Of a stretch of DNA of 64,000 nucleotides, positions 1-63,394 are shown one piece after another. The notes under the pieces were generated by a model that was not told the DNA's origin, did not search any database, and saw nothing but the letters and a program-made list of their open reading frames with translations. The DNA comes from Macrostomum lignano (Eukaryota), in NCBI GenBank assembly GCA_002269645.1, contig NIVC01000993.1, forward strand, positions 95,532 through 159,531, read 5' to 3'. A program made the position numbers and the translations under genes. The stretch's first letter is position 1; the number at the start of each line of letters is the position of its first letter.

Positions 1-2450
1 ATCTGCTGTCAAATCGTCTGCCGGCAGACGAAACAACTAATCAGTGGTGGGGATGTTTTTAGATAAATAATAATGTATTTTGATTATAATATTGATAACA
101 ATTATCTTGATTATTAATTCATGCATAATTTAGTTGCCAATATTTTAAGCAAAGTGAAATAATTTGTTATAGTTTGTTTACATGTTGCATAACATAATTC
201 ACCCGAGTGGCATTGATAAAAACCCCGACTAAAGGTACAAAAACGAGTGCATAAGATCGGGTAAATGCCATGTCATATGCCACGGTGACATGTCTTCTAC
301 TCAATTAAAAGCGGGCTTATGTATAAATCCAATGAACTATTTTCCACGCATAATTAAAATTGTCATTTTGCTGTTTTTAATATAGATCGATGGATTAGTT
401 CAAACAGTGGAAAGAAGTTTCAATGTTACTGCAATATTACTAGTTGCATTGCAAAGTGTAGAGTATTTAAATCAGAATGAGAACTGTTTACTGTTATCAG
501 GGAACTGTCTATTTATAATACCTTAAAACATTTAATAAAAGAAGGCCTAACCCTCTATACAGGCCTATTATGTAGGGTATACTGTATATAGATCTTTTTA
601 ATTTATAAAGACCTATCTTTGTTCATTTATTTTTAGTCAATGCTAAGCCTCTACTATAATTATATGTTATTAAAATATATCATTATAAAATAGTTGGGCC
701 CTATACTAGCTAGGCTTATACTTATAGCTTGCAAATTTATATCAAATTTATATCCAACATTTTTCTAATCCTAATCTTTTTACAAATCTAGCTTTTCCTT
801 AGCCTTAGTATTTTTAGATTAGATACAATTTTTTAGCCTTAATATTTTTTTTCAATTTAGTTTCTTTTCTAGCTATAATCCTTATTTGAATTTTTTAGTT
901 TAAATTAATCTTTAAAAGCTACTTTATCCTTAAGCCTAGCCTTAATTTGTCTAACAATGTAGCTTTCCCTTATCTTAATCATAATCCTTTAAAGAATCTA
1001 GTAGCTCTATAACCGCAATCCTTTAAGTAATCTATCCTCTCTCTTATCTTAATCATCTAAGAAATTTAGCCACTTTCCTATCTCAATCCTCTAGGAATTT
1101 AGCTGCTTTCTTATCTAAATCTTCTAGGGGATCTAGCCACTCCCAATTCCCAATTCTCTAAATAATCTAGCTGCTTTCTTATCCAAATCCTTTAGGGAAT
1201 CTAGCCACTTCTCTTTCCCAATCCTCTGGAAAATCCAGCCACTCCACTTTCCCAATCCTCTAGGAAATTTAGCTGCTTTCTTATCCAAATCCTCTGGGGA
1301 ATCTAGCCACTCCCCTTTCCTAATCCTCTAGGGAATATAGTCCCTCCTCTTTACAAACCCTCTGCGGAATCTAGCCAATCCCCTTTCCTAATCCTTTGGA
1401 GAATCCAGCCACCCCCTTTCCTAATCCTCTAGGGAATCCAGCCACTCCCCATTCCTAATCCTCTATGGAATCTAGCCACTCCCCTTTCCCAATCCTCTGG
1501 GGAATCTAGCCATTCCCCTTTCCTAATCCTAGTGATGGATCAAAATTATTTTTCAAATCGAAATCAAAATCAAAATTTTCGGTTCCTTAGAATCAAAATT
1601 GAAATCAAAATCAAAATTGAAATTTTTTAGCTTAACAAATTTTTACTTTTTCGCTAATCATGCAAAAAGGTTAACACCTTGCCTCTGCATGTATGAGCTT
1701 ACATGTTTTATAAAAAGTAGCTTTGATATGTTTAAACCAGAATACTTAAGATTTAACTTACTTTAAAAATACAAAATAGAAAATGCTGGTGTATTATATA
1801 TTATACACTCATACATCGAAATATAGTAGAAGTTGTATTATACTTCACTGCTGTTTAAGCTGAAGATTTAGATACAAGTAGCCTATATCCATTTCATTAA
1901 GGCTTTAAGTCTTTAGCCAATTTAAATCCATGCCGATAAGTTCAGCCAGTGGGCTTGTGGAGGTTGAGGTGGGTGCAGCACAAGGCCTGGAACAGTGTGT
2001 GCCCCGCATAATCTTTCTTGTAGAAAAGGCAATTCTCACCTCCCCACTGAGTCTTTGAACCGCACTTCTTTTCACTTCCTATAGATTTTCTTTCTTGTGT
2101 AGCATGATCATTAATGTCTAAATTGTTAAAATATAGCCAAAATTTGGAAATGATTTTCAATAAATGGTGTCAAAATTCGAAATCAAAATCAAAATTATTT
2201 TGATGCAAAATTAGTTTCAAAATTTGGAATATCGAAATCGAAATCAAATTTCGATCTATCACTACCTAATCCTCTGGGGAATCCAGTCAGTCCCCCTTCC
2301 TAATCTTCTGCGGAATTTAGCTGCTTCTTTTTCCCAATCCTCTGAGGAATCCAGTCATTCCCTTTTACAAATCCTCTAGGGAATCCAGCCACTCCCCTTT
2401 CCTAATCCTCTGGGGAATCTAGCCACTCTCCTTTCCCAATCCTTTAGGAA
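1..2450 (+). repeat. Left arm of the inverted repeat (interrupted by MITE 1530-2264)
   Basis: AT-rich outer part, then degraded, then intact AATCCTCTGGGGAATCYAGCCACTCCCCTTTCC units. Mirrors 12645-14707. Confidence 0.9.
1530..2264. mobile_element. Non-autonomous hAT-type element (MITE), 735 bp
   Basis: Imperfect TIRs TAGTGATGGATCAAAATT / TAGTGATAGATCGAAATT. 8-bp TSD CCTAATCC at 1522-1529 and 2265-2272. Subterminal AAATC repeats. Absent from the right arm. Confidence 0.9.
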
Positions 2451-3208
2451 GGTTTTTGTTTTGACCACTGTGCCAGTCTGGTGGAAAGTAATTCAAATGT
2501 CTGCAATGGTAGAGAACAAATACTATTACATTACATTAGTCATTACATCTATTAAGCTTTAAGGCCTATTATCTCAAATATGTAATTGTATGTAATTGCA
2601 TCAAAACAATTGCATGAAAAGAAACATTAGCTTACTTGAAGAACTCCAAGATTGTCATTTAAAATTCCTGCGACTTCAGGAGAAGCACACATGCAAATAT
2701 TGGAGCCGCTGCGACACTTCATGATAATAATGATATGATAGTCAGCAAACATTAGATGTGCCTGCAAGTGATTAAGCAAATTTATTCATTTACGCACAGG
2801 TGGTACTACCACACAGTCTGTTAGTCTGGACAAGTACAAAATTTAAAATTTAACTTTGGTGCATAGTATGCAATTCAATATAGTTACCAAATCCTCCAAT
2901 GTATGCACCAAGGGAGTTTGCTGAACTTTTTCTTGTGCAGCACGTTTGTACACAGATTTTTCTTCAGCAGTTAGACTTTTAAATTTGTCACTTAAAAAAG
3001 CCATGCGTTTCTTGGAAAAGTTATCTGAAATAATTGTAGATCATTACTCCATTTAAAACAAAAAAAGTAGAACTTACAAAAAAGAAACAACACTGAAGTT
3101 CAAAGCAAAAAAGCCAAACAAAATCTTACTTGTTCCCATAGTCTTCAAAAACATGGACTAGGCACTGGTCTTTCTTGGGCATAAACGCCAACTTCGGCAC
3201 TTTTTCAT
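2444..3208 (-). pseudogene. Four-exon HMG-box-like gene with one in-frame TAG, in the foldback spacer
   Basis: Exons 3220-3130, 3024-2888, 2761-2636 and 2500-2444 have canonical AG/GT sites and compatible phases (1,0,0). From ATG 3208 they splice to MKKCRSWRLCPRKTSA*SMFLKTMGTNNFSKKRMAFLSDKFKSLTAEEKSVYKRAAQEKVQQTPLVHTLEDLAHLMFADYHIIIIMKCRSGSNICMCASPEVAGILNDNLGVLQTFELLSTRLAQWSKQKPS*. LSDKFKSLTAEEKSVYKRAA resembles HMG-box helix 3. Confidence 0.7.
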
Positions 3209-3323
3209 GCTTAAAAATAGCTGAAAATTGAATTGAAGACAAATAAACCAAACAATTATTATAAAACATGATTTCCTTAAATGAAAAAAAAGGAAAATGG
3301 AAATATAAAAGGATGGAGATAAG

Positions 3324-4310
3324 TGTTGTAGGGGTCTGTCTCTCAGTTTAAGAATCTCACTGCTATTACCAAAACTGTTGTAGGGGGGGTATTTATGGAA
3401 CTCTTGGGATTTCTGAAAGATAGTATAATTTTATTACTAATAGGAGTAAGCCAAGGGTTGCTCCTGGTGGCGTGAGTGTCCGAGCAGCAAGACACTGTCT
3501 AAAGGTTAAACTCTCCGAGGGGGGGCTACGCGGCAGATCAGAGTTGCCTGGGGAATTATCGCACGATGGGAATTTCTAATAGCTAATAAGGAATGATTTC
3601 ATGGGGAAGAGTTCACTTAATGGAATCGTTAAGGGGAGGCTAAGATTTCTAATAGTTAAACTTCAAAGTAGGGGAACGAAATACCGAGTCAGTTGGGAGT
3701 TAGAGTTGGGCCAGATAACTGGGTGACAGTAGGTCTGGGTAGGGAGTTGGCTGAACTCCAGGTCGAATTCTGGGGTCTGGGGGTTAGGGAAGGAAAGAGA
3801 GGCAAAGCTCTTGGTCACTGGGGGATAGGGGATGAGGTAATCACTGAGCGTGTCTGCAGGGTTGGAGGGGGGGGAAAGCTGTACGCTTATAGCTGGACAG
3901 ATCCTTCGTGGGGAGAGGGGAGAGGCTGTACGCTTCGGCTAAACAGGCCTTGGGAAAGGGCTGAACGCCTAAATAAAGAACAGTGAGTCAGGCAGTGCCC
4001 AATTACAACCTTTGTATTAGCCAACCTCTTAAAGGAGAGTGGGCCACACGAGGAGGAAGAAGAAGTCTCTCCTGACGTTACAATCGCTCGCTTATATAGT
4101 ATATTTTAACAAAATGTCAGACAATTTTAAACAAACATTTTACTAGATAACAATTTTTTACTAATATTCAAGTGCGCATTTATATTTTTAAGAAAAAGAA
4201 AACATTATACAAGCTCACATATTTTACGATATTAAAGGCAGAAATTTAGTCGTGAAGGCAACAAAGAATAAGGTATTAAGATGCATTGCTATAATAAACT
4301 GCCTGCCTCA
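3324..4310 (-). repeat. 3' LTR
   Basis: Direct repeat of 11623-12610, with ~24 substitutions and ~4 small indels by manual alignment. Confidence 0.97.
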
Positions 4311-4324
4311 ACTGGCCTTCCTAC
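4311..4324 (-). promoter_or_regulatory. Putative polypurine tract
   Basis: GTAGGAAGGCCAGT abuts the 3' LTR on the minus strand; only moderately purine-rich. Confidence 0.5.
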
Positions 4325-4508
4325 AATAAATTTTTAAAACAAGATATGCGAGTGCGAAAATTTATTAAACAGGTAAATGTATTATTGCAAACAGATAAAT
4401 GTACTATTGCAGAAAAATAATTGTTCAGTTCACACAGTTCACTCAAATGAAGCGAAATTCTTCAGGTAGCCAGTCCGGGTGTGGCCATCGGCACTTATAA
4501 CCAAGCCA

Positions 4509-5362
4509 CTAAACTTCTTTGACGACGTTCTCAATGTTGTACTCACGATGTTCTCGATTTAAATCGCTCAACGCGTACACAGTGGTGCGTTGCCAGGCAG
4601 CGAGGGCCTGATTCAGCGGCATTTGGCGCAACATGCGCAGAGTGGGCCAAACGTCCTTGCACTGAGGGAAATCGCGAGCCACCCGAATTAGATACAATTT
4701 CAGCGTGGTGACGTGATGACGGAATTTGGCTCGTTGGTAGTCGGGCAAGTTGGCCACTACATTGTTGTAATACTCGCCGAGGTTTTGAGGCGGCTGAGGC
4801 TGGGCTCGCTGAGCTGGTTCGGCCATCAGAGGCGGAATCTCAGCCTTAGACGATTCGCTCTTGACAATCGGGTCGGTCAAAGATCTGTACCGTGGCTGAT
4901 GCTGCGACTGCATACTGTAATCTTCAGGCGGCTTTACGATCGGCGAATGAGAGTGTTCTCTGGGGTCGGCAGTCGAGGAAACGGCGGCGGCTTGGGAGTC
5001 GCTAGTGGGTGACGGTGGGCCAGTTTGTGGGCCAAGATGACCGGACTTCACTATGTGCGGCGCCTCCTTCAGGGAAATCACTTTTGATCGATTGCTACCG
5101 GGGGGCTGACGTTGCACGGCCTCAGGGTCGAGAGAACTGGGGCGTCAGCTTGCTTTTGCAAAAGCTGGGCACGCTTCTTGGGCGTAGCTGCAGGGGGCGG
5201 TTTAGTGACAACTGAAGCTACTTTTGACTTGTGGCACGGTAAGTTGGGCCTAGTGGCTTGCCTAATTGGCGCTGGCAGTTCATTCTCATCGTTGAACTCA
5301 CTATCGTCGCTATCACTTAGGGAAAATTCGTCTTGTAGACGTTTGAGTTCTTCGGGATTCAT
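4509..5362 (-). CDS. Extra ORF of unknown function between pol and the 3' LTR, split by one frameshift
   Basis: MNPEELKRLQDEF... (ATG 5362) overlaps ORF 4509-5117 around a C6 run at ~5100-5106. Joined length is roughly 280 aa, with an S/P-rich N-terminal part and a helical-looking C-terminus. Confidence 0.6.
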
Positions 5363-5929
5363 GACGGATTGCAAGGTATAATTCAGATTGATAGCGGGAA
5401 GATAAAAGTCGAGTTGACAGTTAGTGTTGTGCAACCAAAAGCTTTTGTATTTACTATCCTCTTAAGTCTGTTATTTGATACTTCTTTGTTTTCATGACCC
5501 ACCTCAATTTCTGTGTTCTTTGTGCTCTCATTCTTCTCTGGATCGATAATTTGAGGGGTTCTTTGTGCATAGCTAGGGTCTGGGCGAGGGCTTCTTGTGT
5601 TCAAAATTTGGGGTTTGCCGGGCGAAGGGGGACGGCGAGGGAGGGGTAGAAAGGCGTAGACGGGCTTAATATTCTAGATTGCGCAAGAATCTTACTGCTA
5701 ATAGTAGGCGGTCTAGATGACAGTTGCAACGGTGTTTATTTTGGGAGGGGTGTCTTAAATTGTAGGGATGACGGTGTGGGGGTTCGGGATCTCGCGGGGC
5801 AGAAGAGGGGGGTTAGAGCTGGGGGGCAGGAAAGGGGGGTTGGAGCTGAGGGGCAGGAGAGGGGGGTTGGGGCTGAGAAATCTTTTCGTTCGGGGCCTCA
5901 ATCTCTGAGTCATCGGTCATTTCATTCTC

Positions 5930-8900
5930 TTACTCTGTCTGGGCTTCACTCCATTCTTCTGGCTGGATTTCATTGTCTTCGTCTCCTAACTCTTCGTTCT
6001 CTGCTTCTCTAATTTGGCATCTCCAATTAATTTCTTCCTCATCGGATTCTTCTTCAGATTCAACTGGTTTGGGCAGGATTAATTTTTGGGAATTTCGGCG
6101 GGGTTGGCCTTCCTTAATTACAGGTTGTCTCTTAGGTTTAGTAGAGGTGGGAATTGGAGCGGGAGTGGGAACGGGAGCGGGATTAGAGGCGGAATCAAGG
6201 GCATCTCGCTGGCCTTCCTTAGTGATTCGCTCTGCAGTAGAATTTGGGACTGGGGTTAGATTGTCTTGATGCACAAGCATTTCTTTTCCTACTAATTCTC
6301 CTTCTTCTTCTTTCTGGACTTTGAAAACCACTTCTGATAGTTGGGCTAAAACTCTAAAGGCGGATCTCTTCTTTTGGTGGAACTTGTGGGATTCTTCGCT
6401 ATCTAGCTGGGGGTTATTAATCAGTGCAAGGCAACCTATAGGGATTCTAGGGGGTAGCTTGTTAGTTTCAGCAGCGACTTGTCTTTTCTCTACTACTTTT
6501 TCCAACTTCTTCTTGACTATCTTATGAGCTTCCTCTAATCTTTCGGCATGCTTAGTGATGTAGGCGGGATAATCAGCGTGTTCTGCTGTACTTCTGATCT
6601 GAGTGTCTAGAGGTAAGGTGGCTTCTCTGCCAAATAATAGGAAGTGAGGGGAAAAACCTGTGGTTGAATTGGGGCTGGTGCGGACTGCTACTAAGGCTGC
6701 GGGAATTAATAAATCCCAATCACCGTGATCCTTATTGATCAAGCAGGTGATGATTGACTTGACTTGCTTATTGAAACGTTCAACTAGTCCATTAGATTGG
6801 GCATGGTAGGGGGTAGTGAAGGTGTGGCAAATATTATAAAGTTCGCAAAAAGCTTTAAATTGTTTGCTGGCGAAAGTTTTTCCATTGTCTGTGTGGATCC
6901 AGGTGGGCTGTCCATATTCTGCTACTATTCGTTCAAGTAGTATCTTGATGACTTTGTCTGATTTTTGGTTTCTAATGGGAAAAGCAAAGGGGTATCTAGT
7001 TGTGCTATCAACAACTGTTAAAACATATTTATGACCTCGTTTGCTTTCTTTTGAGATTGGGCCGATGATGTCTATGTGCAGGCGGCTAAATGCTTTACCA
7101 ATAGGGAACGACTGGACTGGGGCCTGGACAAAATGTCCTTTCTTGCTCTCAAGGCAGGGGATGCACTCAGCAATTAATTGCTCGACTGAAGTGCTTAGTC
7201 TGGGTCGCCAAAATCTTTCTCTTATCCTCTGGAGCGTTTTATCTCTTCCTAGATGTCCTGCAAGGGGGCTGCAGTGTAGATCAATAAAAACTGCTTTGTC
7301 TAGGGATGGGGGCAAAACTACTTTGTTCTTTCCGTCTTCGGCAATTGTCAATAGTTCGTTATCGATCTCCATCAGTTTGAAATATTTACTGACTTTCTCG
7401 GGCACGTCCGGTGATTTGGGGAGTTGGCTCAGTTTCTGTTTCTTTGCTTCTAGTAGAGCTTTGATAATGGGGTCAGCAGCTTGGGCTTCTTCAATCTGTT
7501 CTTTCTTCAGGGGGCTGGGGAGATAATCAGTTAACAACTTCTCACACTTTCCTGTCTCTTCTTTTTCTGCTTCTACTTCTCTACCTGAGACAATTAGCTT
7601 TGTCCTAGATTCGGGACATTCAGTCTGGGTCTCGCTTTCTGTCAGAGCTTCAGGTGACTGGGACATGGGGTTGTCCTTAGTTTCAGCGGGAGCACTCTCA
7701 TCTCTCAGGGGAACAGGGGTCAATTTCTCAACTTTCTCAGGGATTGGCTCAGTTCTCTCAAAATTTTCTTCAGATGCTTCAGGGGTTTCAGGGATCGCTT
7801 CAGCAGACTCAGTGGCTGCGTCAGGGACTTCAGGTGCTATTTCAGCAAGTTCGGGGGCTGCTTCAGGGGATATTTCAGGGGCTTCAGCTATCTCAGCTGG
7901 TCTTCGCGACAATCCGTCGGCATTGGAATGTTTTGCGCCACTTCTGTGTTCAATGTCGAACCTGAATTCGTTCAGACGCTCTATCCATCTACCTAGGATT
8001 CCGGTTGCTTCAGTCTGTCTCATGAGCCAAATTATCGCTTTATGATCAGTTCGGGCTAAGAATTTCTTGCCGATCAGATAAAATCTGAAATGCCTCATAG
8101 CGTTGACAAGGGCTAACAATTCTTTCCGAGTAATGGGGTAACGCTTCTCTGATTCCTTCATTGCTCTACTAAAATAGGCTATTGGTCGCTCTATGCCATC
8201 ACTCTGGATTTGGCCAAGGCATGCGCCAATCCTGTCGTCACTGGCATCTGTGTCGAGCACCATTTTCACATTTTCATCTTCGACATATTTGGGGTATGCT
8301 AATACTTCAGTAGACATCATTTGCTGCTTCAGGGACTCAAAGGCTTCGTCATGCACTTTGCTCCACTTAGATTGGAAATTCTGAACTCCTTTTCGAGTCA
8401 ATTGGAATAGGGGGTGAGCCACTTCGGCATAATTTTTCACAAATCGGCAATAATAATTGCATAGGCCAAGAAAACTGCGTAGTTCTTTTATGTCTTTGGG
8501 ACGGGGCCAAGTTTGGATAGCTTCAATCTTCGTCTTGTCTGTTTGAATGCCTTGTCGGCCAATCACGTGTCCTAAGTACTTTAACTCGTGGTGGAAAAGA
8601 TTGCACTTTTTGGGTCTCAACTTCAGACCTGCGGCAATTAGTCGCTTAAACACTTCTCTTAAGTGCTCTAAATGTTCGGCAAAAGTTTGGGAGTAGGCTA
8701 TTATGTCATCTATATAGGACATGGCAAACTTGTGTTGGATTCCTAATAATACCAAATTCATTAGGCGTTGGAAGGTTCCGGGGGCATTGGAAAGTCCTTG
8801 GGCCATCACTTGGTATTCAAATTGGCCTCTAGTTAGGGTGGAGAAGGTGGTTCGATGCTTATCTTCTTCTTTGATGGGGACTTGCCAGTATCCTGAGTTT

Positions 8901-10563
8901 AAATCAAGGCTGCTAAAGTATTGGCTACCAGTTAGGTGGGAGAAGGTCTCTTGAATATTAGGGAGGGGTAGGGGTAGTAATTAACTCTTGAGTTGAGCAC
9001 GCGGAAATCGCTCACGATTCTAATAGAACCGTCTTTCTTGGGGACAATTACTAGGGGAGTGGAGTAAGTTGAATAGCAGGGTCTAATTAGATTTTTGGCT
9101 AACATATCGTCTAATTGGGCGTCAACTTGCTTTTGCAAGTGTGGGAGGGATGCGTCTAGCTGGGATTCTAACGGGAGTGGGGTCTTTGATAGAGATTTCG
9201 TGGGTTACTAAGTGTGTCAGGCCCATGTCTAATTCATTCTGGGAAAAAGCTTCACGGTTTTCTTTCATTAAGTCAATGACTGCTTTTCGCTGTTTATCTG
9301 ACAGTTCAGGGCCAAGGCTCACTTCATTAATCCAGGAATCTTCAGTACATTGAGTCTGGTTGACTTTCGCAGGGAGTTGGGAGCTGGGGGTTGGGTTTGC
9401 CAATAGGTTAGATCTTTAGCTTTCATGGGTCTGGCTAAGCCAATTAGGGAAGTTTTAGTTAGATTCACATCTACTAGGTGGTGGTTAATAATTTTGACAA
9501 TTCCTTTGCCTTCTTTCATAGTTACTAAGGTTGGAACCATTTCTAATGAGAAATCACGGGTTCAGATAGTATTGCCAATGGCTTCAATGGTCATAGGAGT
9601 GCCGTAATTCGATTCACAATTCTTGGCTAACTTCATGGGTATTCGAAGGGCACTATTAGCTGGGATGATTACTCTTTCTTGAGTATAAACTCGGCAAACT
9701 TTCACGGGTAGGCGGGTATACTGCATGGGTATACAGGTACCTTCATTAAGCACTAGCATTCCTTTGGCTAGCTGAATGCTTTCGCATTGGGATAGGAAAA
9801 ATTCCATACCTAGAATATTGTCACAATCATGTCGGCATAGGAGGAAATCAACTTTGATTTGGATATCGCCAAATTTCACTTGGGCGGATACTTCTCCTTC
9901 TAATTGAACTGGGGTACCGTCAAATGTACTGATGCTTTTGCTAGTGTCTTGGATTTGATCGGCACGGAATAGCTTAGACTAGGTTGAGCGGCTCAGGAAA
10001 TTATTTCTGGCGCCTGTGTCTAGCAAGAAATCAATCGATTCTTTCTGGATATCGCCAACAATTACAGCTTCATAACCTTCTAGCTTAGTCAGGTCGATTC
10101 GGGATGGGGAATTGGGTTTTGGCTTTTGTCGCTTCCTTGAGCGAGTTTCAGCACTGGATAGAGCATTATTGGTTTTAATCGCATGGGATACATGGGGTGC
10201 AAGCGCAGTGGGTACATGGGGTGCGGACACATGATGTACATGAGCTTTGGTCGCATTGGTTACATGAGAGGCGGTTGCATGGGGGGAATTGTATACATGA
10301 GGGTCATGGGGGGCATTTGGCATGGCATTGTCGGCATCATCAAAGGCAAGAAGTGAAAAATTATTGGGGGAGACAAATATCGCATTATTTATAGGCATTG
10401 GCTGTACATGGGAGGTTTTGCGGGGATAGCGGAAACTGTACTGGGGAGGTTGCCGGTATTTCGGCTGGGGGGCATTTCGAAATGATAGGGAGGCAGGAGA
10501 GTAAGCAATATTTTGGCCTGAGGGGCGTGGCCTCTTAACTCGACCCTGGCTTCTCAGTTTCCC
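5930..10563 (-). pseudogene. pol: pol: aspartic protease, RT, RNase H, integrase; 5' half disrupted
   Basis: Protease FLLDTGA. RT PQGL-like AQGLSNAPGTFQR and YIDD. RNase H VLDTDAS. Integrase HCSPLAGHLG..C..C, LHIDIIGP, TDNG, NGLVERFN. Several frameshifts and one TAG in 8800-10000; 5930-8809 is open for 959 aa. Confidence 0.95.
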
Positions 10564-11540
10564 GACTTCTGGGAGTCACGGGGGTTACGGAACTTCAGCG
10601 GCTCATATCTTGGGTTAGGGGCTGACGCTCATTCCTTCTTGGGGGTTCACATCTTGGCGGCTGGTTCATCAGCTGGGGCCTGTACTGCTGCTGAGGTTGC
10701 GGCCTGTACTGCTGCTGAGGTGGCTGTCTGTACTGCTGCTGGGGTGGCTGTCTATACAACTGAGGGTTTGGCTGTCTGTACTGCTGAGGAGGTGGCTGCC
10801 TATACTGTTGCTGGGGAACACCTGAGATGACGGGGCGCATTGCGCTGTTTCGGCCAGTTGTTTCTGCAGGTTCTGAATAAGCCTTTCTTGGCGGTCAATT
10901 TGGTTCTGCTGATTGATGATCAATTGATCAGTTTTAGCCTTATTCTCCTCTTTCTCTTCTTTAGTCACTTGGATTCCACCTTTGTGGGACATCTGGTAAG
11001 CAGCTTCAATTCTGCGCAGCATTCTGTGGGCGGCTTGGAGACTAGCCGGTTGGGCAAGGATCAGCTTCTCACGGGTGTCGGGAGGGGTTCTCACACCTTT
11101 AATAAATTGTTCGACAAGTTCTTCTTCTCTCTACTCAGCATCCATGTTCAGGAATGCGTGGGAGGCTAATTCTATTAGGGCATCGGCAAAGCTATTAGTG
11201 GATTCGTTTCTGCCTTGGCAGCAATTCCTAAACTCTTCGCGAAATTCGGCGGAGCTACCTACTTTTCCAAATCTTTCGATTAGTCTTTCTTTGAACTCTT
11301 CATAGGGGAGATTAGCTGGGAGGTTGAGGCGTTGAACTGCTGCAAATGCAGTGCTCAGGTCTAAATTGGTAAGCAGTTCCTGCTTCCGGTTTTCTTCTTC
11401 TATGCCTTCGTTTTCACATCTCTGGTCAAATGCGGTAAGCCAAACTCTAATATCTTGGCTGGGAAGGTACTTCTGGATCTTTACATGTCTGAGGGGGCCT
11501 AATTCGAGTCAGTTGCAAGGGCATCGTTAACTGCGGCCAT
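10554..11540 (-). pseudogene. gag: gag (frameshifted, one internal TAG)
   Basis: ATG 11540. After an early frameshift it reads ...VKIQKYLPSQDIRVWLTAFDQRCENEGI...FKERLIERFG...EELVEQFIKG. TAG at 11133-11131. Q/P-rich QQYRQPP repeats. Ends SGN-TGA at 10554. Confidence 0.8.
10557..10563 (-). promoter_or_regulatory. -1 ribosomal frameshift slippery heptamer G GGA AAC at the gag/pol junction
   Basis: An XXXYYYZ heptamer is in frame with gag immediately before its stop. The -1 frame is open for 53 codons into ORF 9979-10398. Confidence 0.75.
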
Positions 11541-11606
11541 ACTACTTCAGGGATTGGAAAGGGAAATTAGGCTGGGGTTGCGCGTTTCTCCAGATTCTGA
11601 TCCTTT

Positions 11607-11619
11607 ACCGCTGCCACCA
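11607..11619 (-). promoter_or_regulatory. Primer binding site, probably tRNA-Leu
   Basis: TGGTGGCAGCGGT lies 3 nt inside the 5' LTR and is complementary to ACCGCTGCCACCA, the 3' end of metazoan tRNA-Leu(AAG/TAG). Confidence 0.85.
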
Positions 11620-11622
11620 AAT

Positions 11623-12610
11623 TGTTGTAAGGGTCTGTCTCTCAGTTTAAGAATCTCACTGCTGTTACCAAAACTGTTGTAGGAGAGGGGGGTATTTATG
11701 GAACTCTTGGGATTTCTGAAAGATAGTATAATTTTATTACTAATAGGAGTAAGCCAAGGGTTGCTCCTGGTGGCGTGAGTGTCCGAGCAGCAAGACACTG
11801 TCTAAAGGTTAAACTGTCCGAGGGAGGGCTACACGGCGGATCAGAGTTGCCTGGGGAATTTTCGCACGATGGGAATTTCTAATAGCTAATAAGGAATGAT
11901 TTCATGGGGAAGAGTTCACTTAATGGAATCGTTAAGGGGGGGGCTAAGATTTCTAATAGTTAAACTTCAAAGTAGGGGAACGAAATACCGAGTCAGTTGG
12001 GAGTTAGAGTTGGGCCATATAACTGGGCGACAGTAGGTCTGGGTAGGGAGTTGGCTGAACTCCAAGTCGAATTCTGGGGTCTGGGGGTTAGGGAAGGAAA
12101 GAGAGGCGAAGCTCTTGGTCACTAGGGGATAGGGGATGAGGTAATCACTGAGCGTGTCTGCAGGGTTGGAGGGGGGGAAAGCTGTACGCTTATAGCTGGA
12201 CAGATTCGTGGGGAGAGGGGAGAGTCTGTACGCTTCGGCTGAACAGGCCTTGGGAAAGGGCTGAACACCTAAATAAAGAACAGTGAGTCAGGCAGTGCCC
12301 AATTACAACCTTTGTATTAGCCAACCTCTTAAAGGAGAGTGGGCCACACAAGGAGGAAGAAGAAGTCTCTCCTGATGTTACAATCGCTTGCTTATATAGT
12401 ATATTTTGGCAAAATGTCAGACAATTTTAAACAAACATTTTACTAGATAACAATTTTTTACTAATATTCAAGTGCGCATTTATATTTTTAAGAAAAAGAA
12501 AACATTATACAAGCTCACATATTTTATGATATTGAAGGCAGAAATTTAGTCGTGAAGGCAACGAAGAATAAGGTATTAAGATGCATTGCTATAATAAACT
12601 GCCTGCCTCA
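11623..12610 (-). repeat. 5' LTR
   Basis: Direct repeat of 3324-4310, followed on the minus strand by the PBS. Confidence 0.97.
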
Positions 12611-12644
12611 TAAGGAATATAATTGTTAGACGTTTGATTCTCCC

Positions 12645-14707
12645 AAAGGATTACGATAGGAGAGTGGCTGAATTCCCTGGAGGAATGGGATGGGAGAGAG
12701 GCTCGATTCCTCAAAGGATTGGGAAAGGGGACTGACTGGATTCCCTAGAGGATTTGGACAGGAAAGCAGCTAAATTCCCTAGAAGATTGGGAAAGGGGAG
12801 TGGCTGGATTTTCCAGCGGATTGGGAAGGGAGAGTGGCTGGATTCCCTAGGGGATTTGTAAAGGGGAGTGGCTGGATTCCCCAGAGGATTGGGAAAAGAA
12901 AGCACCTAAATTCCCCAGAGGATTGGGAAAAGAGAGTGGCTAGATTTTTCAAAGGATTAGGAAAAGAAAGCACCTAAATTCCCTAGCCAGAGGATTTGGA
13001 AAAGAGTGGCTAGATTTTCCAGAGGATTGGGAAAGAGAAGTGGCTGGATTCCCCAGAGGATTAGTAAAGGGGAGTGACTGGATTCCCCAGAGGATTGGGA
13101 AGGGAGAGTGGATGGATTCCTCAGAGGATTGGGAAAAAGAAGCAGCTAAATTCCCCAGAAGATTGGGAAGGGGGACTGACTGGATTCCCTAGAGGATTTG
13201 GATAAAAAAGCACCTAAATTCCCCAGAGGATTGGGAAAAGAGAGTGGCTGGATTCCCCAGAGGATTGGGAAAAGAGAGTGGCTGGATTCCCCAGAGGATT
13301 GGGAAAAGAGAGTGGCTGGATTCCCCAAAGGATTGGGAAAAGAGAGTGGCTGGATTCCCCAGAGGATTGGGAAAGAGAAGTGGCTGGATTCCCTAAAGGA
13401 TTTGAATAAGAAAGCAGCTAGATTATTCAGAGGATTGGGAAAGGGGAGTGTTTGGATTCCTTAGAAGATCTGGATAAGAAAGCAGCTGGATTCCCTAGAG
13501 GATTGAGAAGGGAGGGTGGCTGAATTCCCTAGAAGATTCGGAATTGGGAGTGGCTAGATGCCCTAGAAGATTTAGATAAGAAAGCAGCTAAATTCCTAGA
13601 GGATTGAGATAGAAAAGTGGCTAAATTTCTTAGATGATTAAGATAAGAGAGAGGATAGATTACTTAAAGGACTGATAGAGCTAGTTATAGAGCTAGTTAT
13701 AGAGCTACTAGATTCTTTAAAGGATTATGATTAAGATAAGGGAAAGCTACATTGTTAGACAAATTAAGGCTAGGCTTAAGGATAAAGTAGCTTTTAAAGA
13801 TTAATTTAAACTAAAAAATTCAAATAAGGATTATAGCTAGAAAAGAAACTAAATTGAAAAAAAATATTAAGGCTAAAAAATTGTATCTAATCTAAAAATA
13901 CTAAGGCTAAGGAAAAGCTAGATTTGTAAAAAGATTAGGATTAGAAAAATGTTGGATATAAATTTGATATAAATTTGCAAGCTATAAGTATAAGCCTAGC
14001 TAGTATAGGGCCCAACTATTTTATAATGATATATTTTAATAACAAATAATTATAGTAGAGGCTTAGCATTGACTAAAAATAAATGAACAAAGATAGGTCT
14101 TTATAAATTAAAAAGATCTATATACAGTATACCCTACATAATAGGCCTATATAGAGGGTTAGGCCTTTTTTATTAAATGTTTTAAGGTATTATAAATAGA
14201 CAGTTCCCTGATAACAGTAAACAGTTCTCATTCTGATTTAAATACTCTACACTTTGCAATGCAACTAGTAATATTGCAGTAACATTGAAACTTCTTTCCA
14301 CTGTTTGAACTAATCCATCGATCTATATTAAAAACAGCAAAATAACGATTTTAATTATGCGCGGAAAGTAGTTCATTGGATTTATACATAAGCCCGCTTT
14401 TAATTGAGTAGAAGACATGTCACCGTGGCATATGACATGGCATTTACCCGATCTTATGCACTCGTTTTTGTACCTTTAGTCGGGGTTTTTATCAATGCCA
14501 CTCGGGTGAATTATGTTATGCAACATGTAAACAAACTATAACAAATTATTTCACTTTGCTTAAAATATTGGCAACTAAGTTATGCATGAATTAATAATCA
14601 AGATAATTGTTATCAATATTATAATCAAAATACATTATTATTTATCTAAAAACATCCCCACCACTGATTAGTTGTTTCGTCTGCCGGCAGACGATTTGAC
14701 AGCAGAT
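12645..14707 (-). repeat. Right arm of the inverted repeat
   Basis: About 1.1 kb of 33-bp units (12645-13740), then an AT-rich segment reverse-complementary to 1-~960. The true outer end may lie beyond 14707. Confidence 0.9.
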
Positions 14708-16079
14708 GAAACAATTGCATCCCTTAAAATGCAATCAGTTTCTCAGTCAGTATCACTTCTCTATTAAAGTTGGCAAGAAAATAAAAGGCAATAATATGGT
14801 AATGCAATCCAAATCAACTCCAAGTTTCAATGCAGTCTTGTAGTGGAAATAATGTTTTATGGTGACACAATTAAGCTAGTCAACTGATAATATATGATAA
14901 ATATAAGCCAGTTGTGATCCAATCTTTATCAAAATTGGAATTTAGTCATTTTTATTTATAATGATTGCCCATGGCATTAAAAGCATTATAAAGTCGTAAA
15001 GACTTGTTTTTTGAATATTTAATTCCCTTAGCATTGAGCAATTTCTTAGCTAGGACACATGCATTATCACAAGTCACAAGAAAAATTCTAATTTAATTGA
15101 ATAGTGCAAGTTTCATTAAAATTGGTTAAGCCATTTTTTCTTAAAATCAATCACATGGCTAGATAGAAACATTTCAATTTTTAGTGTATATTAGTATATG
15201 TGAAGCAAGCAAGCATACAAACCTTTGAGATTTAGTATAGGCCTATTAGGAAGGAAGTATATTAGTATATATAGGAAGGATGAAAAATTCAATATTTAAG
15301 TTGATATAGAAAATTCATAGAATTTGTAGAATTTTGTTTTGTGTATCTATTATGGCAAAAGATAAAAATCCAAGCCCCAATATGTAAAAATATAGAATAA
15401 ATAAATCTAATTTTCAGCACTAGAGAAACAAGCTAATTGTACCTATTTTTACTTCTCTATATTTGGTTATATACAATTCCAATTATAAGCTATAATGACA
15501 ATGAATAATCTAATGTTTATTTGTTTAAGTTGGTTTACCTGCTGTTAACCATTTAATAATGCAAAGTGTTTCTCCTGATATGATATATTTTTCTTCAAAA
15601 TTGTAGTCTATTACCATTTTAAAGTGTATCTAGCTAGTATGTGTTCTTGCTCTTGCTTTCATTTTTACACTTTATAATTTGAAAAACAAAGGTCAAAACC
15701 TTTGTCTACTTTCTATATAGAATTCACATATTTCTAAAATAAAGAAGCCAATTTTAAGCAAAAGAAAAAGCAGAATATTTATAACTAAGGTCAAAAATTG
15801 TTTTTTTACCATAGCTAAATATTTGATAGAGCTCTTAGTACAATTTACTTTTTATCTTCTAAACTTAGAGCAAATAAAAACTTTTAAGCCTATAAAAACT
15901 TACTATTATTATCCAGAAAAAAGAAGCACTTTAAAAATGTCACACCTAATAAGTAGAAAATAAATTTACATGTACCGGAATAGTTAACTAGTTAGTTAGC
16001 TTCAATTCAATGACACAAAATAATGTTAAATGTTAAATATTAAAAGAGGTTAAACACTTATGTAATTATAGCACTTTTT

Positions 16080-17100
16080 CACTTCTATTGTTTTTGTAGT
16101 GGCCCTTGCTCTTTAGAGCAATTACCTAAAACACACCTACGAGTAAGTCTACATCATTACAATTCTTTCTCCATCTCTTTAGCCTTTTTTGCTTTTTTCA
16201 GCCATCTACTCATTTTTAGCAGTTTGCTTATTTTTAGCTGTCTGCTCATCTTTAGCTATCTGCTCAATTTTAGCCATCTGCTCATCTTTAGCTGTCTGCT
16301 CAATTTAGTACACATACTAAACTTGGGTAAAAACACTTTTTAATAAGCATTTTGGAACAGAGCAGGCAATCTCAATATGTCAAATGGCCTCCTTTATATG
16401 TAACTTTACCTGTTGCCTACCCGGCTTAAAAGCAGGGTGGTAACTATAAGATAAAAACTTCCTATTATTGCTCTCCAACCACAATGGGCCCATTTTGACA
16501 GCTCTGAGCTATACTAAAACAGTCTGACAACACTTGGTCTACAAGTCTTTTTTTACAAATGATAGCAACACTATTCCCAAAAGCGATACTGAAACCACCA
16601 TTGGTCAAGTACTTCTAACCAATACCACTGACAGTATAAACATTACAACTAGGCATTCATAAGCTGAGCAATTTAGTTGCCTCTTTTATATTTGTAGCCT
16701 AAAGTTGAATACCAACCATAAAATTCTTTATTCAACAAAGACAATGGCAAGGGGCCTTGACCATCAAATATAGTGAAAGCATCTTTAACAAAAGCCTGCA
16801 ATAAATATATAAAGGAAAGCATTTTTAAGTAATTTGTCTTTAAGCAACAAATAATGTAATTTAACAACAAAAATGTATATGTACTAAAAATATACCCTCT
16901 ACATAACCCTACAGAACTACATATATCAACTTCCATGACTCTACTTTTGTGAATAAGGTGAAACATGAAAACAAAACATTATTATGTTTTCTTGCTGCGG
17001 TATGTCTTATGTGATAAGATAAAGTAGAAGACAGATTAAAGTAGGATAAAGCAACTAGAGGTGCCTTAAGGGCTAGGTTGAATGCTGCCAAGATGAACTG
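16080..17100. pseudogene. Heavily decayed coding-like remnant, identity unknown
   Basis: Long frames broken mainly by TAA/TAG/TGA. An 18-bp x ~6 repeat at 16200-16310 reads EQTAKD-like on the minus strand. The sense strand is not resolved. Confidence 0.3.
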
Positions 17101-19282
17101 GGTTAGAAAATGTAATCTTTTAGTATAAACATGAAGGAAATTATCATGTTTTCTTGCTAGGGTGTCTTATATAACTTATATACTTGAAATGTATATAACT
17201 TTATGTTAAGACAAGTTAGGACCTACACAATAATACAATTAGATTATATGCTATAATCAAACTAATTAGCTTTTCATCTAGGTAGATTATCTAGCCATTA
17301 TTATATTGGTTGTTAAGCATTTATTTGAGGCAATTTTAGTTGAATGATCTCTAAAATATTTTTGACTTCATCTTGGGACTAGTCAATACATAATACTTGT
17401 AAGCCAACATTGTAATATTGGCTGATTAAGTTGCAAGAGCAAGGTTAACTATGGCTAGGTTTGTATCTATTTAATAAGATTAAGGTAGGCCTATAGTAAG
17501 TTTGGGGCTGAAACTGAAAGTGGGACTTTGGGTCATAGACAAGTTAGCTTATGGGCACTCAAAAGAAAGTACTTTTATTAAATGCAAGGAAACAAATAGA
17601 TCTAACTGGCTTAACTGCTACAATATAATAATAAAAGCATATTGAGTTCGTTTTTATTATTAGGCCTAATTTTGTAATATAAGTTTATTATTAATCATAG
17701 ACAATAAATAAATTTAAAAAGTTTTTTTTAAGTATTAAATATATAATTAAGATAACAAAGTATTAAATAAAAGTGGTAAGAGCCTAAATACTATAGGCTA
17801 GGGGCCTAAATCAAATAAAAGTCAATAATAGGCCTTGACTTGACTAAGCTACAGGGGGCTCCATGCTTCTGAAAACAGCAAGGAAGCATTGCCACCCATT
17901 TTGCTAATTCTAGTTAGTTTGATTTTTAAGTCAATAATAGGCCAATAATATACAAATAAATCTAATACTATAATAGGCCCTAATGCTTTGTAAATAGGCC
18001 TAGTTAAGTAATGAAAGCATTAAATTTAAACTCAAAAGAACTATAGGTCTATACATTCTGTTCAAGAAAGCAAAAATAAATAAACACATGGTCATGATTT
18101 CTTGCTTCGCTATATGCTATGCTATGATTATGCTATGATTGCCTTATTGTCTAAATTAGTATAGGCTATTAGCTGATATTGTTAGGCCTACAAATAGGTA
18201 CAGGGAAGAAGGTAGATAAGTAGATATACTAGACAATATAGGTAGGACATAGGCAGGCTGCATGCAAGAAGCAAGCAATCTTAATATGGTTGGCTCAATG
18301 TCAAAATCAATGCCTTAGTAGCTATAAGTCTAAGTTCATTTTGAAAAGATGATTTTCTCTTGAAAAAGCAACTTATAGAAATGTGTGAAAATATATAAAA
18401 TCTCTTCTATCAACTGATCTAGGTTAAATTTTTATATCGGCTCATATAAAAATTTGTAATATAACAATTACAAATTTTGTGATGTAATTGTTATATTAAG
18501 TGATCTGTGTGATCAAACTGCCACCTGACCTGGGACATAGCTGGCTAGGCCAATCCACAAAATACCAACACCCTAAGCTAGACTGCCTTTAAAAACTGGC
18601 TAGTGATTTTAACAAAGTAGTTTAAATTGCTACTAAATGGTAAAAAAATTATTCCTAGTTCGGAAATAATAAAATATATAAAATTTTGCCTTAAAAATAA
18701 AGTCCTTCAAAATCAAATACTTGTTTTGGTATTCACCAAAACATTAATTCGCTGAAACATTACTTTTCCAAAACAAAATGTTGCAGCACCAGCAGCAACT
18801 TATGTTCAGTTGAATGTACACTATAAGTATAATTGCGCTATTGATAAGACCCAATACAAGCATTTTGTAATTGATTCTAGATTGACTAGAATAGTACCAG
18901 TTGGTGAATATGCCTAGTATTCCTAGTTATTATATAGGCTATTAATTTGGGGCAAAAAATTATGGAGTACTTATTATAGGCACGTCCGCCATGTCTATAG
19001 GCCCTAATGTTAAGCACACATGGTAGCTTTAAATTGCAGCTATAAATTCATTTGCCTTTCAATATTAATGACACTGCTACTGGCGTTGTGCAGGTATTAT
19101 TGGCATGGCCGCTATCTCCAGTGTGAGATGCATTCTATATTGTATGGACATGGTTGCCAACTCGCCGTGTCTATAAGGCTCTAATAATATTATAGACACG
19201 GCAGCCTGGTCTACAGTCTACATTTAAAGCATAAGTTTTCGTTTTATAAAAAAAATTATAAACTTTTCATGCATTATAAGAG

Positions 19283-22200: not shown

Positions 22201-22720
22201 CTGCGTACGTATCCGCGCGCTTGTGTGCCTGCTCAGGTGAGTCGGCAGAATGGGCAGTAAGGCCTCTCGCTGCCCCTAATAAAAAGCTCAGAACTTCACA
22301 AGTATTTACAAGTTCAAAACTTTGCTGGGCAGTAAGGCCTCTCGCTGCCCCTAATAAAAAGCTCAGAACTTCACAAGTATTTACAAGTTCAAAACTTTGC
22401 AAGCTCGTAATTTTTCAAAGTTAAATTTGTGACTTTGCTGTCAAAAAATTCGAATATTTAACATTCGTCATTAATTACAGGTGATGCTAACCAGACGACG
22501 TCGCGATATGGGCAAGTTCTCCTCCGTGACTGTGTCCACTATTGAAGCCGATCAGGAGGAGGTTGAGGCCAGAGAAATCGCCGACTCATACGCCGCCAAT
22601 GCTCGCATAGTTGAGAAGCAGCTGCTGCGCAAAGGCGTCATCAGGAAGCGATTAGTGGAAGAGCGCAATCAGGATGCGCAGGCGAAACGTCAGGCTAGGG
22701 GGACGCTTATCGACTATTGA
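19283..22720 (+). CDS. STEEP1: STING ER exit protein (CXorf56/UPF0428 family), 243 aa, 3 exons
   Basis: Exons 19283-19519, 21343-21597 and 22481-22720, all phase 0 with GT-AG. Motifs [73 protein letters not shown]. Confidence 0.93.
19605..21250 (+). repeat. 20-bp minisatellite filling STEEP1 intron 1
   Basis: (ACCATAGACAKAATTGAGCT)n, about 80 units. Confidence 0.98.
21684..21983 (+). mobile_element. tRNA-derived SINE, family A
   Basis: A box TAGCCTAGTGG, B box GGTTCGATTCCC, body motif GTCCTTGAGCAAGACACTTAAC, (ATT)n tail. Confidence 0.85.
22000..22287 (+). mobile_element. tRNA-derived SINE, family B copy 1
   Basis: A/B-box-like head (TGGCCTAGTGG, GGCTCGATTCCC). The body is shared with 40693-41048 and 62532-62732. 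Confidence 0.85.
22251..22400 (+). repeat. Exact 75-bp tandem duplication spanning the SINE 3' end and flank
   Basis: 22251-22325 equals 22326-22400. Confidence 0.9.
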
Positions 22721-22794
22721 TTCTGCGTTTGATTTGGATTTGTTTCATTGTAATATGTGATTAAGACACTAAACTTACTCTTTACTTACTGTCA

Positions 22795-34575: not shown

Positions 34576-34724
34576 ACATATTTGATATATTGGACTTATT
34601 GAACTTCGGTGCAAGAGCCGATAGTTATATACAATTTGTAACTGGGTACTCCGTGATGCTACAGGTTGCTTATGTTTGTTTTATGTGATCTGCAAATTAA
34701 TTCATCTTATTGTATTAGTTAGGA

Positions 34725-37150: not shown

Positions 37151-37254
37151 AGCATTCACATAGGAACTGTGTGAACGTGTTGCGATTAATAGACAATAGG
37201 ATGTGTAACAGCCTAGCAACACTGCCGTTTTCTGCGCATCCCACGCGCCGAGTC

Positions 37255-55709: not shown

Positions 55710-63394
<7,685 letters not shown>

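What the first reader, a model, noticed from the sequence alone, without database searches (positions are those of the whole stretch)
2444..3220. Spliced four-exon HMG-box-like gene hidden in the foldback spacer
Seen: four exons, absent as a unit from the ORF track, with canonical splice sites and compatible phases give a ~132-codon product with a single TAG (3160-3158). The frame ends exactly at the inner edge of the left arm. Reverting C->T and G->A changes gives MKKRRSRRLRPRKTSAWSMFLK...LSDKFKSLTAEEKSVYKRAAQEK, a basic stretch plus an HMG-box-like fold, followed by an unrecognised ~60-aa segment. Retained introns imply DNA-level capture or a native gene of the element. Known: HMG-box proteins occur with some DNA transposons (Zisupton/KDZ, related to HMGXB3), and Pack-type elements capture host genes. 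Inference: a DNA-bending accessory gene of an undescribed foldback transposon, or a captured host gene.
Basis: partly seen in the sequence, partly recalled or inferred. Interest (0 to 1): 0.8.

Follow-up and report, generated by a model that had tools for sequence, protein, structure and literature searches.

The report
Dead transposon accessory gene fragment
The four-exon gene is real, but here it is a broken, cut-off copy of the second gene of a flatworm (Macrostomum lignano) KDZ/Zisupton-type DNA transposon that has kilobase foldback arms; the "HMG-box" label remains unproven.

Summary
On the minus strand, exons 3208-3130, 3024-2888, 2761-2636 and 2500-2444 have GT-AG borders, join in frame (399 nt) and carry one TAG (3160-3158). 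UniProt A0A1I8I8P9 of Macrostomum lignano equals residues 19-132, so the same junctions were predicted independently.

The copy is dead:
- Intact paralogues (PAA92828.1, PAA87934.1) have five exons and W where the window has TAG.
- The window copy stops inside exon 4, at the junction with the arm (2450/2451). Its TAA lies in arm repeat.
- dN/dS against the intact copy is about 1.
- A Ty3/Gypsy element sits 115 bp upstream of the ATG.

Two intact elements in assembly GCA_002269645.1 (18.9 and 23.7 kb) show the architecture:
- 8-bp target duplications and termini CACCCGAGTGG.
- Arms of 3.4-4.1 kb: an 0.8-kb outer domain plus a 34-bp tandem array.
- A KDZ transposase gene just inside one arm, and this gene, convergent, just inside the other.

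A diverged subfamily (transposase 53% identical, different arm repeats) keeps the same layout and intron positions. So the gene is native to the element, not captured.

The window has no transposase and no target duplication. Its flanks (1-199 and 14509-14707) are inverted copies of each other, which suggests a secondary inverted duplication.

HMG-box similarity is sub-threshold throughout.

The parts
1..199 (.). DNA outside the element terminus. It is an inverted copy of 14509-14707, with 1 difference in 199 nt.
200..1013 (+). Left arm, outer unique domain. The transposon terminus CACCCGAGTGGCAT... starts at 200.
   Evidence: It is 99.3% complementary to 13696-14508 and about 94-96% identical to the arms of the intact elements, whose termini map to exactly this position.
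1014..1529 (+). Left arm, 34-bp tandem-repeat array, outer part (about 15 units).
1530..2264 (.). hAT-like MITE nested in the left arm only. Its TIRs are TAGTGATGGATC.../...GATCTATCACTA, with an 8-bp TSD CCTAATCC.
2265..2450 (+). Left arm, 34-bp array, inner part (about 5.5 units). It abuts exon 4 of the gene at 2450/2451.
2444..2500 (-). Exon 4, truncated. Positions 2500-2451 are homologous to the intact gene. Positions 2450-2444, including the TAA at 2446-2444, are arm repeat.
2636..2761 (-). Exon 3. It holds the best-conserved core of the family (ADYHIIII-K-R-G....CASPEV).
2888..3024 (-). Exon 2. It encodes helices 2-3 of the HMG-like stretch (NFSKKRMAFLSDKFKSLTAEEKSVYKRAA).
3130..3208 (-). 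Exon 1, with ATG at 3208-3206, a basic N-terminus and the premature TAG at 3160-3158 (TGG = W in intact copies).
3324..12610 (-). Ty3/Gypsy LTR retrotransposon inserted 115 bp upstream of the ATG. Its LTRs are 3324-4309 and 11623-12610 (97.6% identical) and its 4-bp TSD is TAAG. The intact loci show the empty site.
12611..12640 (.). The rest of the spacer, between the gene's 5' region and the right arm.
12641..13695 (-). Right arm, 34-bp tandem array (about 30 units).
13696..14508 (-). Right arm, outer unique domain. The terminus is at 14508.
14509..14707 (.). Right flank, the inverted copy of 1-199. No direct 8-bp TSD is present (ACATAATT on the left, AATTATGT on the right).

Best explanation
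Window 2444-3220 is a dead, 3'-truncated copy of the non-transposase gene of a Macrostomum lignano DNA transposon family of the KDZ (Kyakuja-Dileera-Zisupton) kind. An intact element has three shown features. It has 3.4-4.1 kb inverted arms, each made of an 0.8-kb unique outer domain and then a 34-bp tandem array. It makes 8-bp target duplications. It carries two convergent genes, each starting about 140 bp inside an arm: the KDZ transposase (with a B-box-like N-terminal exon) and this five-exon gene. The gene's product has a conserved core of about 195 aa and a variable tandem-repeat tail. In the window only the gene-side arm and exons 1 to most of 4 survive. A second, inverted copy of that arm, together with at least 199 bp of flanking DNA, is joined directly to exon 4. 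I infer that this happened by a fold-back or inverted-duplication event rather than by transposition. The fragment then decayed neutrally, with CpG-to-TpG loss and a premature TAG, and a Gypsy element and a MITE landed in the structure. For the intact protein I infer, but have not shown, that it is a DNA-binding architectural cofactor. It would recognise or bend the arm repeats and help the transposase pair the two very long ends, much as TnpA does for En/Spm or the Myb-like ORF does for PIF/Harbinger. I give this function about 40-45%.
For: Identity and splice junctions. Truncation inside exon 4, with the stop in arm repeat. Neutral decay: 18 nonsynonymous and 5 synonymous codon changes over 309 and 86 sites, so pN and pS are both about 0.06; CpG o/e is 0.34 against 0.91 in the intact copy. 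Full-length elements are at NIVC01000211.1 (merged-locus coordinates 4911-23769, TSD GTTTTCGG) and NIVC01000038.1 (6521-30173, TSD GCGCCACC). They are 99.8% identical to each other over 12 kb, lie in unrelated flanks, and have arms 100% identical over the first roughly 1.6 kb. The KDZ domain scores E = 7.6e-30 and 6.1e-32. A second subfamily at NIVC01004148.1 has a transposase 53% identical and different (9/45-bp) arm repeats, but the same convergent gene pair and the same intron positions. Between subfamilies pS is 0.84 (saturated) and pN is 0.38, which indicates long-term purifying selection. All four genomic copies I could retrieve lie inside such arms. No homologue outside M. lignano was found among 1.84 billion representative proteins. 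The window has no KDZ sequence and no TSD, and its flanks are mutual inverted repeats.
Against: The DNA-binding role is inference. HMG-box and MADS similarities are all below significance and both AlphaFold models are poor (pLDDT 45.6 and 50.4). I could not search the whole M. lignano genome, so a free-standing host copy of the gene cannot be excluded. The 34-bp arrays of the two window arms are only about 70-82% alike, while the outer domains are 99.3% alike. A recent inverted duplication fits this only if the arrays turn over quickly. The window starts inside the left copy, so the extent of the palindrome is unknown.
Confidence: 0.8

Rival explanations
1. The window structure is a genuine non-autonomous deletion derivative, with a true left arm and a true right arm, that transposed into the exact centre of a pre-existing perfect palindrome. 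On this view the inverted flanks belong to the target and not to a duplication.
For: The last 4 nt of the left flank and the first 4 nt of the right flank are both AATT. An insertion with a 4-bp palindromic TSD into ...ACATAATTATGT... is therefore formally possible. The arrays of the two arms differ a lot, as expected for two independently evolving arms.
Against: Both intact insertions make 8-bp TSDs. A 4-nt palindrome at the flank edge has a 1/16 chance of arising anyway. The 1-199 flank is as similar to its partner (1 difference) as the arms are to each other. That pattern fits one duplication spanning both arm and flank.
Confidence: 0.12
2. The gene is a host gene (an HMG-box transcription factor) that a foldback element captured, Pack-style.
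For: It has introns. UniProt's automatic names for relatives are 'HMG box domain-containing protein' and 'MADS-box domain-containing protein'.
Against: Every genomic copy I could retrieve sits inside arms, next to a KDZ transposase, in the same orientation. This holds in two subfamilies whose synonymous sites are saturated. There are no relatives outside M. lignano. No Pfam domain passes its threshold.
Confidence: 0.05
3. The palindrome in the window is a long-read assembly artefact (a chimeric fold-back read).
For: The outer arms plus flank are more than 99% identical, and the symmetry runs to the window edge.
Against: The arms differ by a 735-bp MITE with its own TSD, by array length (about 20 against about 30 units) and by array sequence. 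A roughly 10-kb asymmetric spacer separates them. The window-specific protein sequence also exists as a UniProt entry.
Confidence: 0.03

Closest known systems
Zisupton / KDZ (Kyakuja-Dileera-Zisupton) DNA transposons
   Same: The full-length relatives carry a transposase with the Pfam KDZ domain (E about 1e-30). They make 8-bp TSDs, as reported for Zisupton and Dileera (PMC12730594). They have terminal inverted repeats.
   Different: The arms are 3.4-4.1 kb foldback-type structures filled with 34-bp tandem repeats, not short TIRs. There is a conserved, lineage-restricted second gene in place of the TET/JBP passengers described in fungi. I found no paper describing KDZ elements in Macrostomum. 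I could not assign the transposase to a KDZ sub-lineage.
Foldback elements (Drosophila FB/FB-NOF, Galileo, Tetris; sea-urchin TU). Comparison from my own knowledge and from the titles and abstracts.
   Same: Very long inverted arms composed largely of tandem repeats, an outer unique domain, variable internal content, and a tendency to cause inverted rearrangements.
   Different: The transposase superfamily differs. Galileo belongs to the P superfamily; the elements here are KDZ. The two-gene convergent layout just inside the arms is also different.
Two-component DNA transposons with an element-encoded DNA-binding cofactor (En/Spm TnpA, from my own knowledge; PIF/Harbinger/Nuwa Myb-like ORF, PMC12730594)
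   Same: A transposase plus a second conserved protein, and subterminal repeats that could serve as its binding sites.
   Different: There is no sequence relationship. Binding to the 34-bp repeats is untested.
HMG-box domain (PF00505)
   Same: A basic N-terminus, a PRKTSAWSMF...FKSLTAEEKSVY pattern, three predicted helices (pLDDT 63-83), weak Pfam hits and an hhalign match to helices 2-3.
   Different: Scores are 13-15 bits against a cut-off of 25.4. Helix 1 is about 10 residues too short. Two subfamilies give no hit at all. There is no significant structural match.

Membership tests
HMG-box (PF00505 / PF09011) | Profile match above the curated gathering score | tested here: not met
   13.1-15.4 bits against cut-offs of 25.4 and 22.4, with E 0.03-0.16 and only 26-31 residues aligned. 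P0003 and the L005 protein give no hit.
HMG-box (PF00505 / PF09011) | Three-helix L-shaped fold recognisable by structure comparison | tested here: inconclusive
   AlphaFold places three helices in the N-terminal 60 aa at pLDDT 63-83, but the overall models are poor. The best Foldseek HMG match is TFAM box B (E 1.8, TM 0.51) in one model, and none appears in the other model's listed top 50. hhalign against 11 HMG boxes that I wrote from memory gives probability 56%, P = 1.1e-4, over 30 columns. I did not check those 11 sequences against Pfam.
KDZ / Zisupton transposon | Element encodes a KDZ-domain transposase | tested here: met
   Met in the full-length relatives: P0013 E = 7.6e-30 and P0015 E = 6.1e-32. 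The window copy itself has no KDZ sequence.
KDZ / Zisupton transposon | 8-bp target-site duplication flanking the inverted termini | tested here: met
   GTTTTCGG and GCGCCACC at the two full-length insertions. This is not met for the window copy, where the flanks read ACATAATT and AATTATGT.
Foldback-type element | Long inverted arms built from tandem repeats around a variable centre | tested here: met
   Arms 1-2450 and 12641-14707 contain 34-bp arrays. The same is true in c211, c38 and L005.
Pack-type captured host gene | A parental host gene exists outside the element | tested here: not met
   All four retrievable loci are element-internal. There are no homologues outside M. lignano. A whole-genome census was not possible with these tools.
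T5orf172 / GIY-YIG (PF10544) | Profile match conserved among family members | tested here: not met
   20.3 bits (cut-off 20) only in the decayed window copy, E 0.14-0.16 in intact copies, and nothing in other subfamilies. I treat it as a chance hit.
MADS-box (SRF-TF) | Profile or profile-profile match to the MADS domain | tested here: not met
   No Pfam hit at E up to 10. hhalign probability is 1.2%, against six MADS sequences that I wrote from memory and did not check. MEF2 and SEP3 structures top both Foldseek lists, but with E of at least 0.34 on low-confidence models. The label comes from UniProt's automatic name.

The most novel reading that the evidence does not exclude
The family is a previously undescribed, currently active two-gene KDZ transposon with foldback arms. 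Its orphan second protein would be the sequence-specific architectural factor that reads the 34-bp arm repeats. The window locus, an inverted duplication of one arm plus the 5' part of that gene, could then act like maize Mu killer. Mu killer is a hairpin-RNA source that silences the active copies (comparison from my own knowledge).
Probability: 0.3. Interest if true: 0.65.

Novelty: new variant of a known kind. Interest (0 to 1): 0.45.

Why it matters
The fragment in the window is ordinary genomic debris. Its value is as a pointer. It leads to a KDZ/Zisupton-type transposon in a regenerating flatworm model that combines three features I did not find described together: kilobase foldback arms made of tandem repeats, a KDZ transposase, and a conserved orphan second gene.

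Two insertions are 99.8% identical, with perfect TSDs and identical arms, so the element has probably moved very recently. That would make it a candidate native transgenesis or mutagenesis vector for M. lignano. It would also offer a tractable case for two questions: how very long repeat-filled ends are paired, and how such elements seed satellites and inverted duplications.

Tried and rejected
- **PDB sequence searches.** phmmer with the product and hmmsearch with the family profile found no HMG or MADS entry.
- **T5orf172/GIY-YIG.** The borderline hit is not conserved in intact copies or in other subfamilies, so I rejected it.
- **MADS-box.** I rejected this by Pfam and hhalign. A helix, beta-hairpin, helix topology does recur in the weak Foldseek hits.
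- **Shared synteny through a neighbouring gene.** The weak 65-69% DNA match between L001 4009-4541 and window 37611-38143 is not a shared BAAT gene. The window ORF there is a TXD17-like thioredoxin. I dropped this idea.
- **Hairpin-loop deamination.** I considered it as the cause of the C>T/G>A excess in the spacer. It is not needed, because the whole window is CpG-depleted (o/e 0.60) and the arms have few CpGs. Ordinary CpG decay of an old inactive copy is enough.
- **A shared promoter in the arms.** The roughly 140-bp segments between each arm and its gene are unrelated to each other.
- **Failed look-ups.** Exact-protein look-ups for P0001, P0002, P0003, P0007 and two window ORFs found no contig. 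I therefore could not extend the window leftwards or fetch the P0003 locus.
- **Literature.** Iyer et al. 2014 (KDZ) is not held in the library.
- **L005 termini.** They could not be defined because the contig ends inside the right arm.
Full report
**1. What is in the window**

The sequence is eukaryotic. Protein matches identify it as Macrostomum lignano, a free-living flatworm.

Positions 1-2450 and 12641-14707 form a large inverted repeat.
- The outer 1013 nt are 99.3% complementary: 7 substitutions and 2 single-base indels.
- Inside that, each arm carries a 34-bp tandem array, CCTAATCCTCTGGGGAATCCAGCCACTCCCCTTT. There are about 20 units on the left and about 30 on the right.

Three later events are visible.
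- A 735-bp hAT-like MITE with an 8-bp TSD (CCTAATCC) sits in the left arm only, at 1530-2264.
- A Ty3/Gypsy LTR retrotransposon occupies 3324-12610. Its LTRs are 986 and 988 bp and 97.6% identical, its TSD is TAAG, and RT-RNaseH-integrase lies on the minus strand.
- Without that retrotransposon the spacer is only about 0.9 kb: 2451-3323 plus 12611-12640.

**2.

On the minus strand, exons 3208-3130, 3024-2888, 2761-2636 and 2500-2444 have canonical GT-AG borders. They join in frame to 399 nt, with one internal TAG at 3160-3158.

Independent support:
- Residues 19-132 are identical to UniProt A0A1I8I8P9.
- The paralogue A0A1I8G5N0 (85% identical) reads ...RKTSAWSMF..., with W where the window has TAG.
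- The same junctions occur in GenBank PAA92828.1 and PAA87934.1. That annotation derives from RNA-seq-guided transcript assembly (PMC5730564).

**3. The copy in the window is a truncated pseudogene**

The intact locus L001 (NIVC01000038.1) aligns with window 2451-3323 at 92.7% identity, introns included. Beyond that point it continues with the rest of exon 4, a 560-bp intron and a fifth exon. The full product has a conserved core of about 195 aa followed by a tandem-repeat tail (AVGHRPAGGIATLPGS, about 17 copies).

In the window, homology stops at 2451. The next bases are arm repeat, and that repeat supplies the TAA at 2446-2444.

Measured against the intact copy:
- The coding part differs at 18 nonsynonymous and 5 synonymous codons. 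pN and pS are both about 0.06, which means neutral drift.
- 26 of the 53 substitutions are C>T or G>A toward the window. Sixteen are at CpG, and only 1 runs the other way.
- CpG o/e falls from 0.91 in the intact copy to 0.34 in the window.
- The arms show a balanced spectrum and 3.5% divergence.

Because the whole window is CpG-poor (o/e 0.60), ordinary CpG decay of an old, inactive copy explains the pattern.

**4. What the gene belongs to**

I fetched the loci of PAA92828.1, PAA87934.1 and the neighbouring KDZ gene and merged the overlapping pieces. This gave two complete elements.
- NIVC01000211.1: merged-locus coordinates 4911-23769, 18.9 kb.
- NIVC01000038.1: merged-locus coordinates 6521-30173, 23.7 kb, longer because of an internal duplication.

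They share these features.
- They are 99.8% identical to each other over 12 kb but lie in unrelated flanks.
- Each ends in CACCCGAGTGGCATCG... and is flanked by a perfect 8-bp TSD, GTTTTCGG or GCGCCACC.
- Within each element the two arms are 100% identical over the first roughly 1.6 kb.
- Just inside one arm lies a gene whose product carries the Pfam KDZ transposase domain (E = 7.6e-30), with a B-box-like first exon.
- Just inside the other arm, and convergent with it, lies the gene of the finding. Both ATGs are about 140 bp from the inner end of an array. Those two 140-bp segments are unrelated to each other.
- A mariner-like element is nested in the middle.

The 8-bp TSD agrees with what is reported for Zisupton and Dileera (PMC12730594).

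**5. The gene is native, not captured**

A second subfamily at L005 (NIVC01004148.1) differs in two ways. Its KDZ transposase is only 53% identical, and its arms are built from quite different 9/45-bp repeats. Even so, it carries a homologue of the gene in the same position and orientation. The first three intron positions and phases are the same, and the exon 4/5 break falls at the same place in the protein.

Between the two subfamilies, synonymous sites are saturated (pS 0.84) while pN is 0.38. The coding sequence has therefore been under purifying selection for a long time.

HMMER against 1.84 billion representative proteins found only M. lignano relatives. A profile search found eight proteins, again all from M. 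lignano. Every genomic copy I could retrieve lies inside arms.

**6. The window is not a clean element**

The termini of the intact elements map to window positions 200 and 14508. Outside those positions the window flanks (1-199 and 14509-14707) are inverted copies of each other, with 1 difference. There is no direct 8-bp TSD, and no KDZ sequence exists anywhere in the window.

The simplest reading is as follows. The gene-side arm, together with its flanking DNA, was duplicated in inverted orientation and joined to a break inside exon 4. That is a fold-back type rearrangement. Insertion of a deletion derivative into the centre of a perfect palindrome, with a 4-bp AATT duplication, cannot be excluded, but it does not fit the family's 8-bp TSDs.

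The arms (0.7% divergence) look younger than the Gypsy insertion (2.4% between its LTRs). This means either that the duplication came after the Gypsy insertion, or that the arms are being homogenised. The arrays of the two arms are only 70-82% alike. I attribute that to rapid array turnover. It is the main observation that sits uneasily with a recent duplication.

**7. Is it an HMG box?**

This is not demonstrated.
- **Pfam.** HMG_box and HMG_box_2 give 13-15 bits (cut-offs 25.4 and 22.4) over 26-31 residues, and only in the window's subfamily. P0003 and the L005 protein give nothing.
- **hhalign.** Against 11 HMG boxes that I wrote from memory, the family profile gives 56% probability (P = 1.1e-4) over 30 columns covering helices 2-3. 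I did not verify those sequences against Pfam.
- **AlphaFold.** The alignment had only eight sequences. Both models put three helices in the N-terminal 60 residues at pLDDT 63-83, followed by helix, beta-hairpin, helix at pLDDT about 40. Overall pLDDT is 45.6 and 50.4.
- **Foldseek.** No match has E below 0.3. MEF2 and other MADS structures head both lists, and TFAM box B appears once (E 1.8, TM 0.51).
- **UniProt names.** The automatic names ('HMG box...' for three members, 'MADS-box...' for the N-terminally shortened models) are the source's own labels.
- **T5orf172.** The 20.3-bit hit is confined to the decayed copy, and I reject it.

My estimate is about 35-40% that the N-terminal domain is a derived HMG box. 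It is somewhat more likely that the protein binds DNA in some way.

**8. How it most likely works**

Shown: the family is a two-gene KDZ transposon with foldback arms and 8-bp TSDs. Two nearly identical insertions point to recent activity.

Inferred: the second protein is an architectural or DNA-binding cofactor that acts on the arm repeats. It would be analogous to TnpA of En/Spm or to the Myb-like protein of PIF/Harbinger. I give this 40-45%.

The window copy has no coding function. At most it could be a source of hairpin RNA from its arms, which is speculative.

**9. Novelty**

The predicted proteins are already in databases as uncharacterised entries. The GenBank annotation excluded transcripts that overlap annotated repeats, so these genes were evidently not recognised as transposon genes at that time. 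I found no paper describing KDZ or Zisupton elements in Macrostomum, or KDZ elements with foldback arms. Repbase could not be consulted.

I therefore rate the family as a new variant of a known kind, and the window feature itself as an ordinary dead copy.

Noticed in passing
window 1530-2264: A hAT-like MITE (TIRs TAGTGATGGATC.../...GATCTATCACTA, perfect 8-bp TSD CCTAATCC, internal AAATC/TCGAAATC microsatellite-like stretches). It is inserted in the left arm only.
   Followed up: partly
window 3324-12610: A Ty3/Gypsy LTR retrotransposon on the minus strand (RT, RNaseH, integrase). Its LTRs are 97.6% identical and its TSD is TAAG. The pol frame appears interrupted, with ORFs at 4509-5117 and 5930-8809. 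The empty site is preserved at the intact paralogous loci.
   Followed up: partly
window 40687-41048 (weaker copies at 21995-22270 and 62544-62732); L001 10954-11318: A roughly 365-bp G+C-rich repeat, possibly a tRNA-derived SINE. It is 93% identical to a sequence in intron 4 of the intact gene copy.
   Followed up: no
window 2451-3323 against L001 9895-10783: A strongly one-directional substitution spectrum in the spacer: 26 C>T or G>A against 1 reverse, and 16 of 27 CpGs lost. The adjacent arms show a balanced spectrum. Window-wide CpG o/e is 0.60, which points to CpG hypermutability in this genome.
   Followed up: yes
L002 15741-16523 (also in L001): A mariner/Tc1-like transposase ORF nested inside the full-length KDZ element. 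In NIVC01000038.1 the surrounding segment of about 3-4 kb is present twice in direct orientation.
   Followed up: no
L001 11630-12460; L005 18093-18397; C-terminus of P0003: Each subfamily of the accessory protein ends in a different tandem-repeat tail: AVGHRPAGGIATLPGS about 17 times, PNPPTV about 17 times, and GRGSAGGSAVVV.
   Followed up: no
merged NIVC01000038.1 locus, right junction at 30173: The TSD plus the flank of this insertion recreates a 12-nt copy of the element's own terminus (CACCCGAGTGGC). This could be target preference, insertion next to a related end, or chance.
   Followed up: no
window 37084-38259: An intronless ORF of 392 aa with a TXD17-like thioredoxin domain (E = 1.5e-23).
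   Followed up: no
window 12001-14000, 32001-36000, 46001-48000, 52001-54000: Blocks with extreme GC skew (from +0.37 to -0.62). The first is the right-arm array. I did not examine the others.
   Followed up: no
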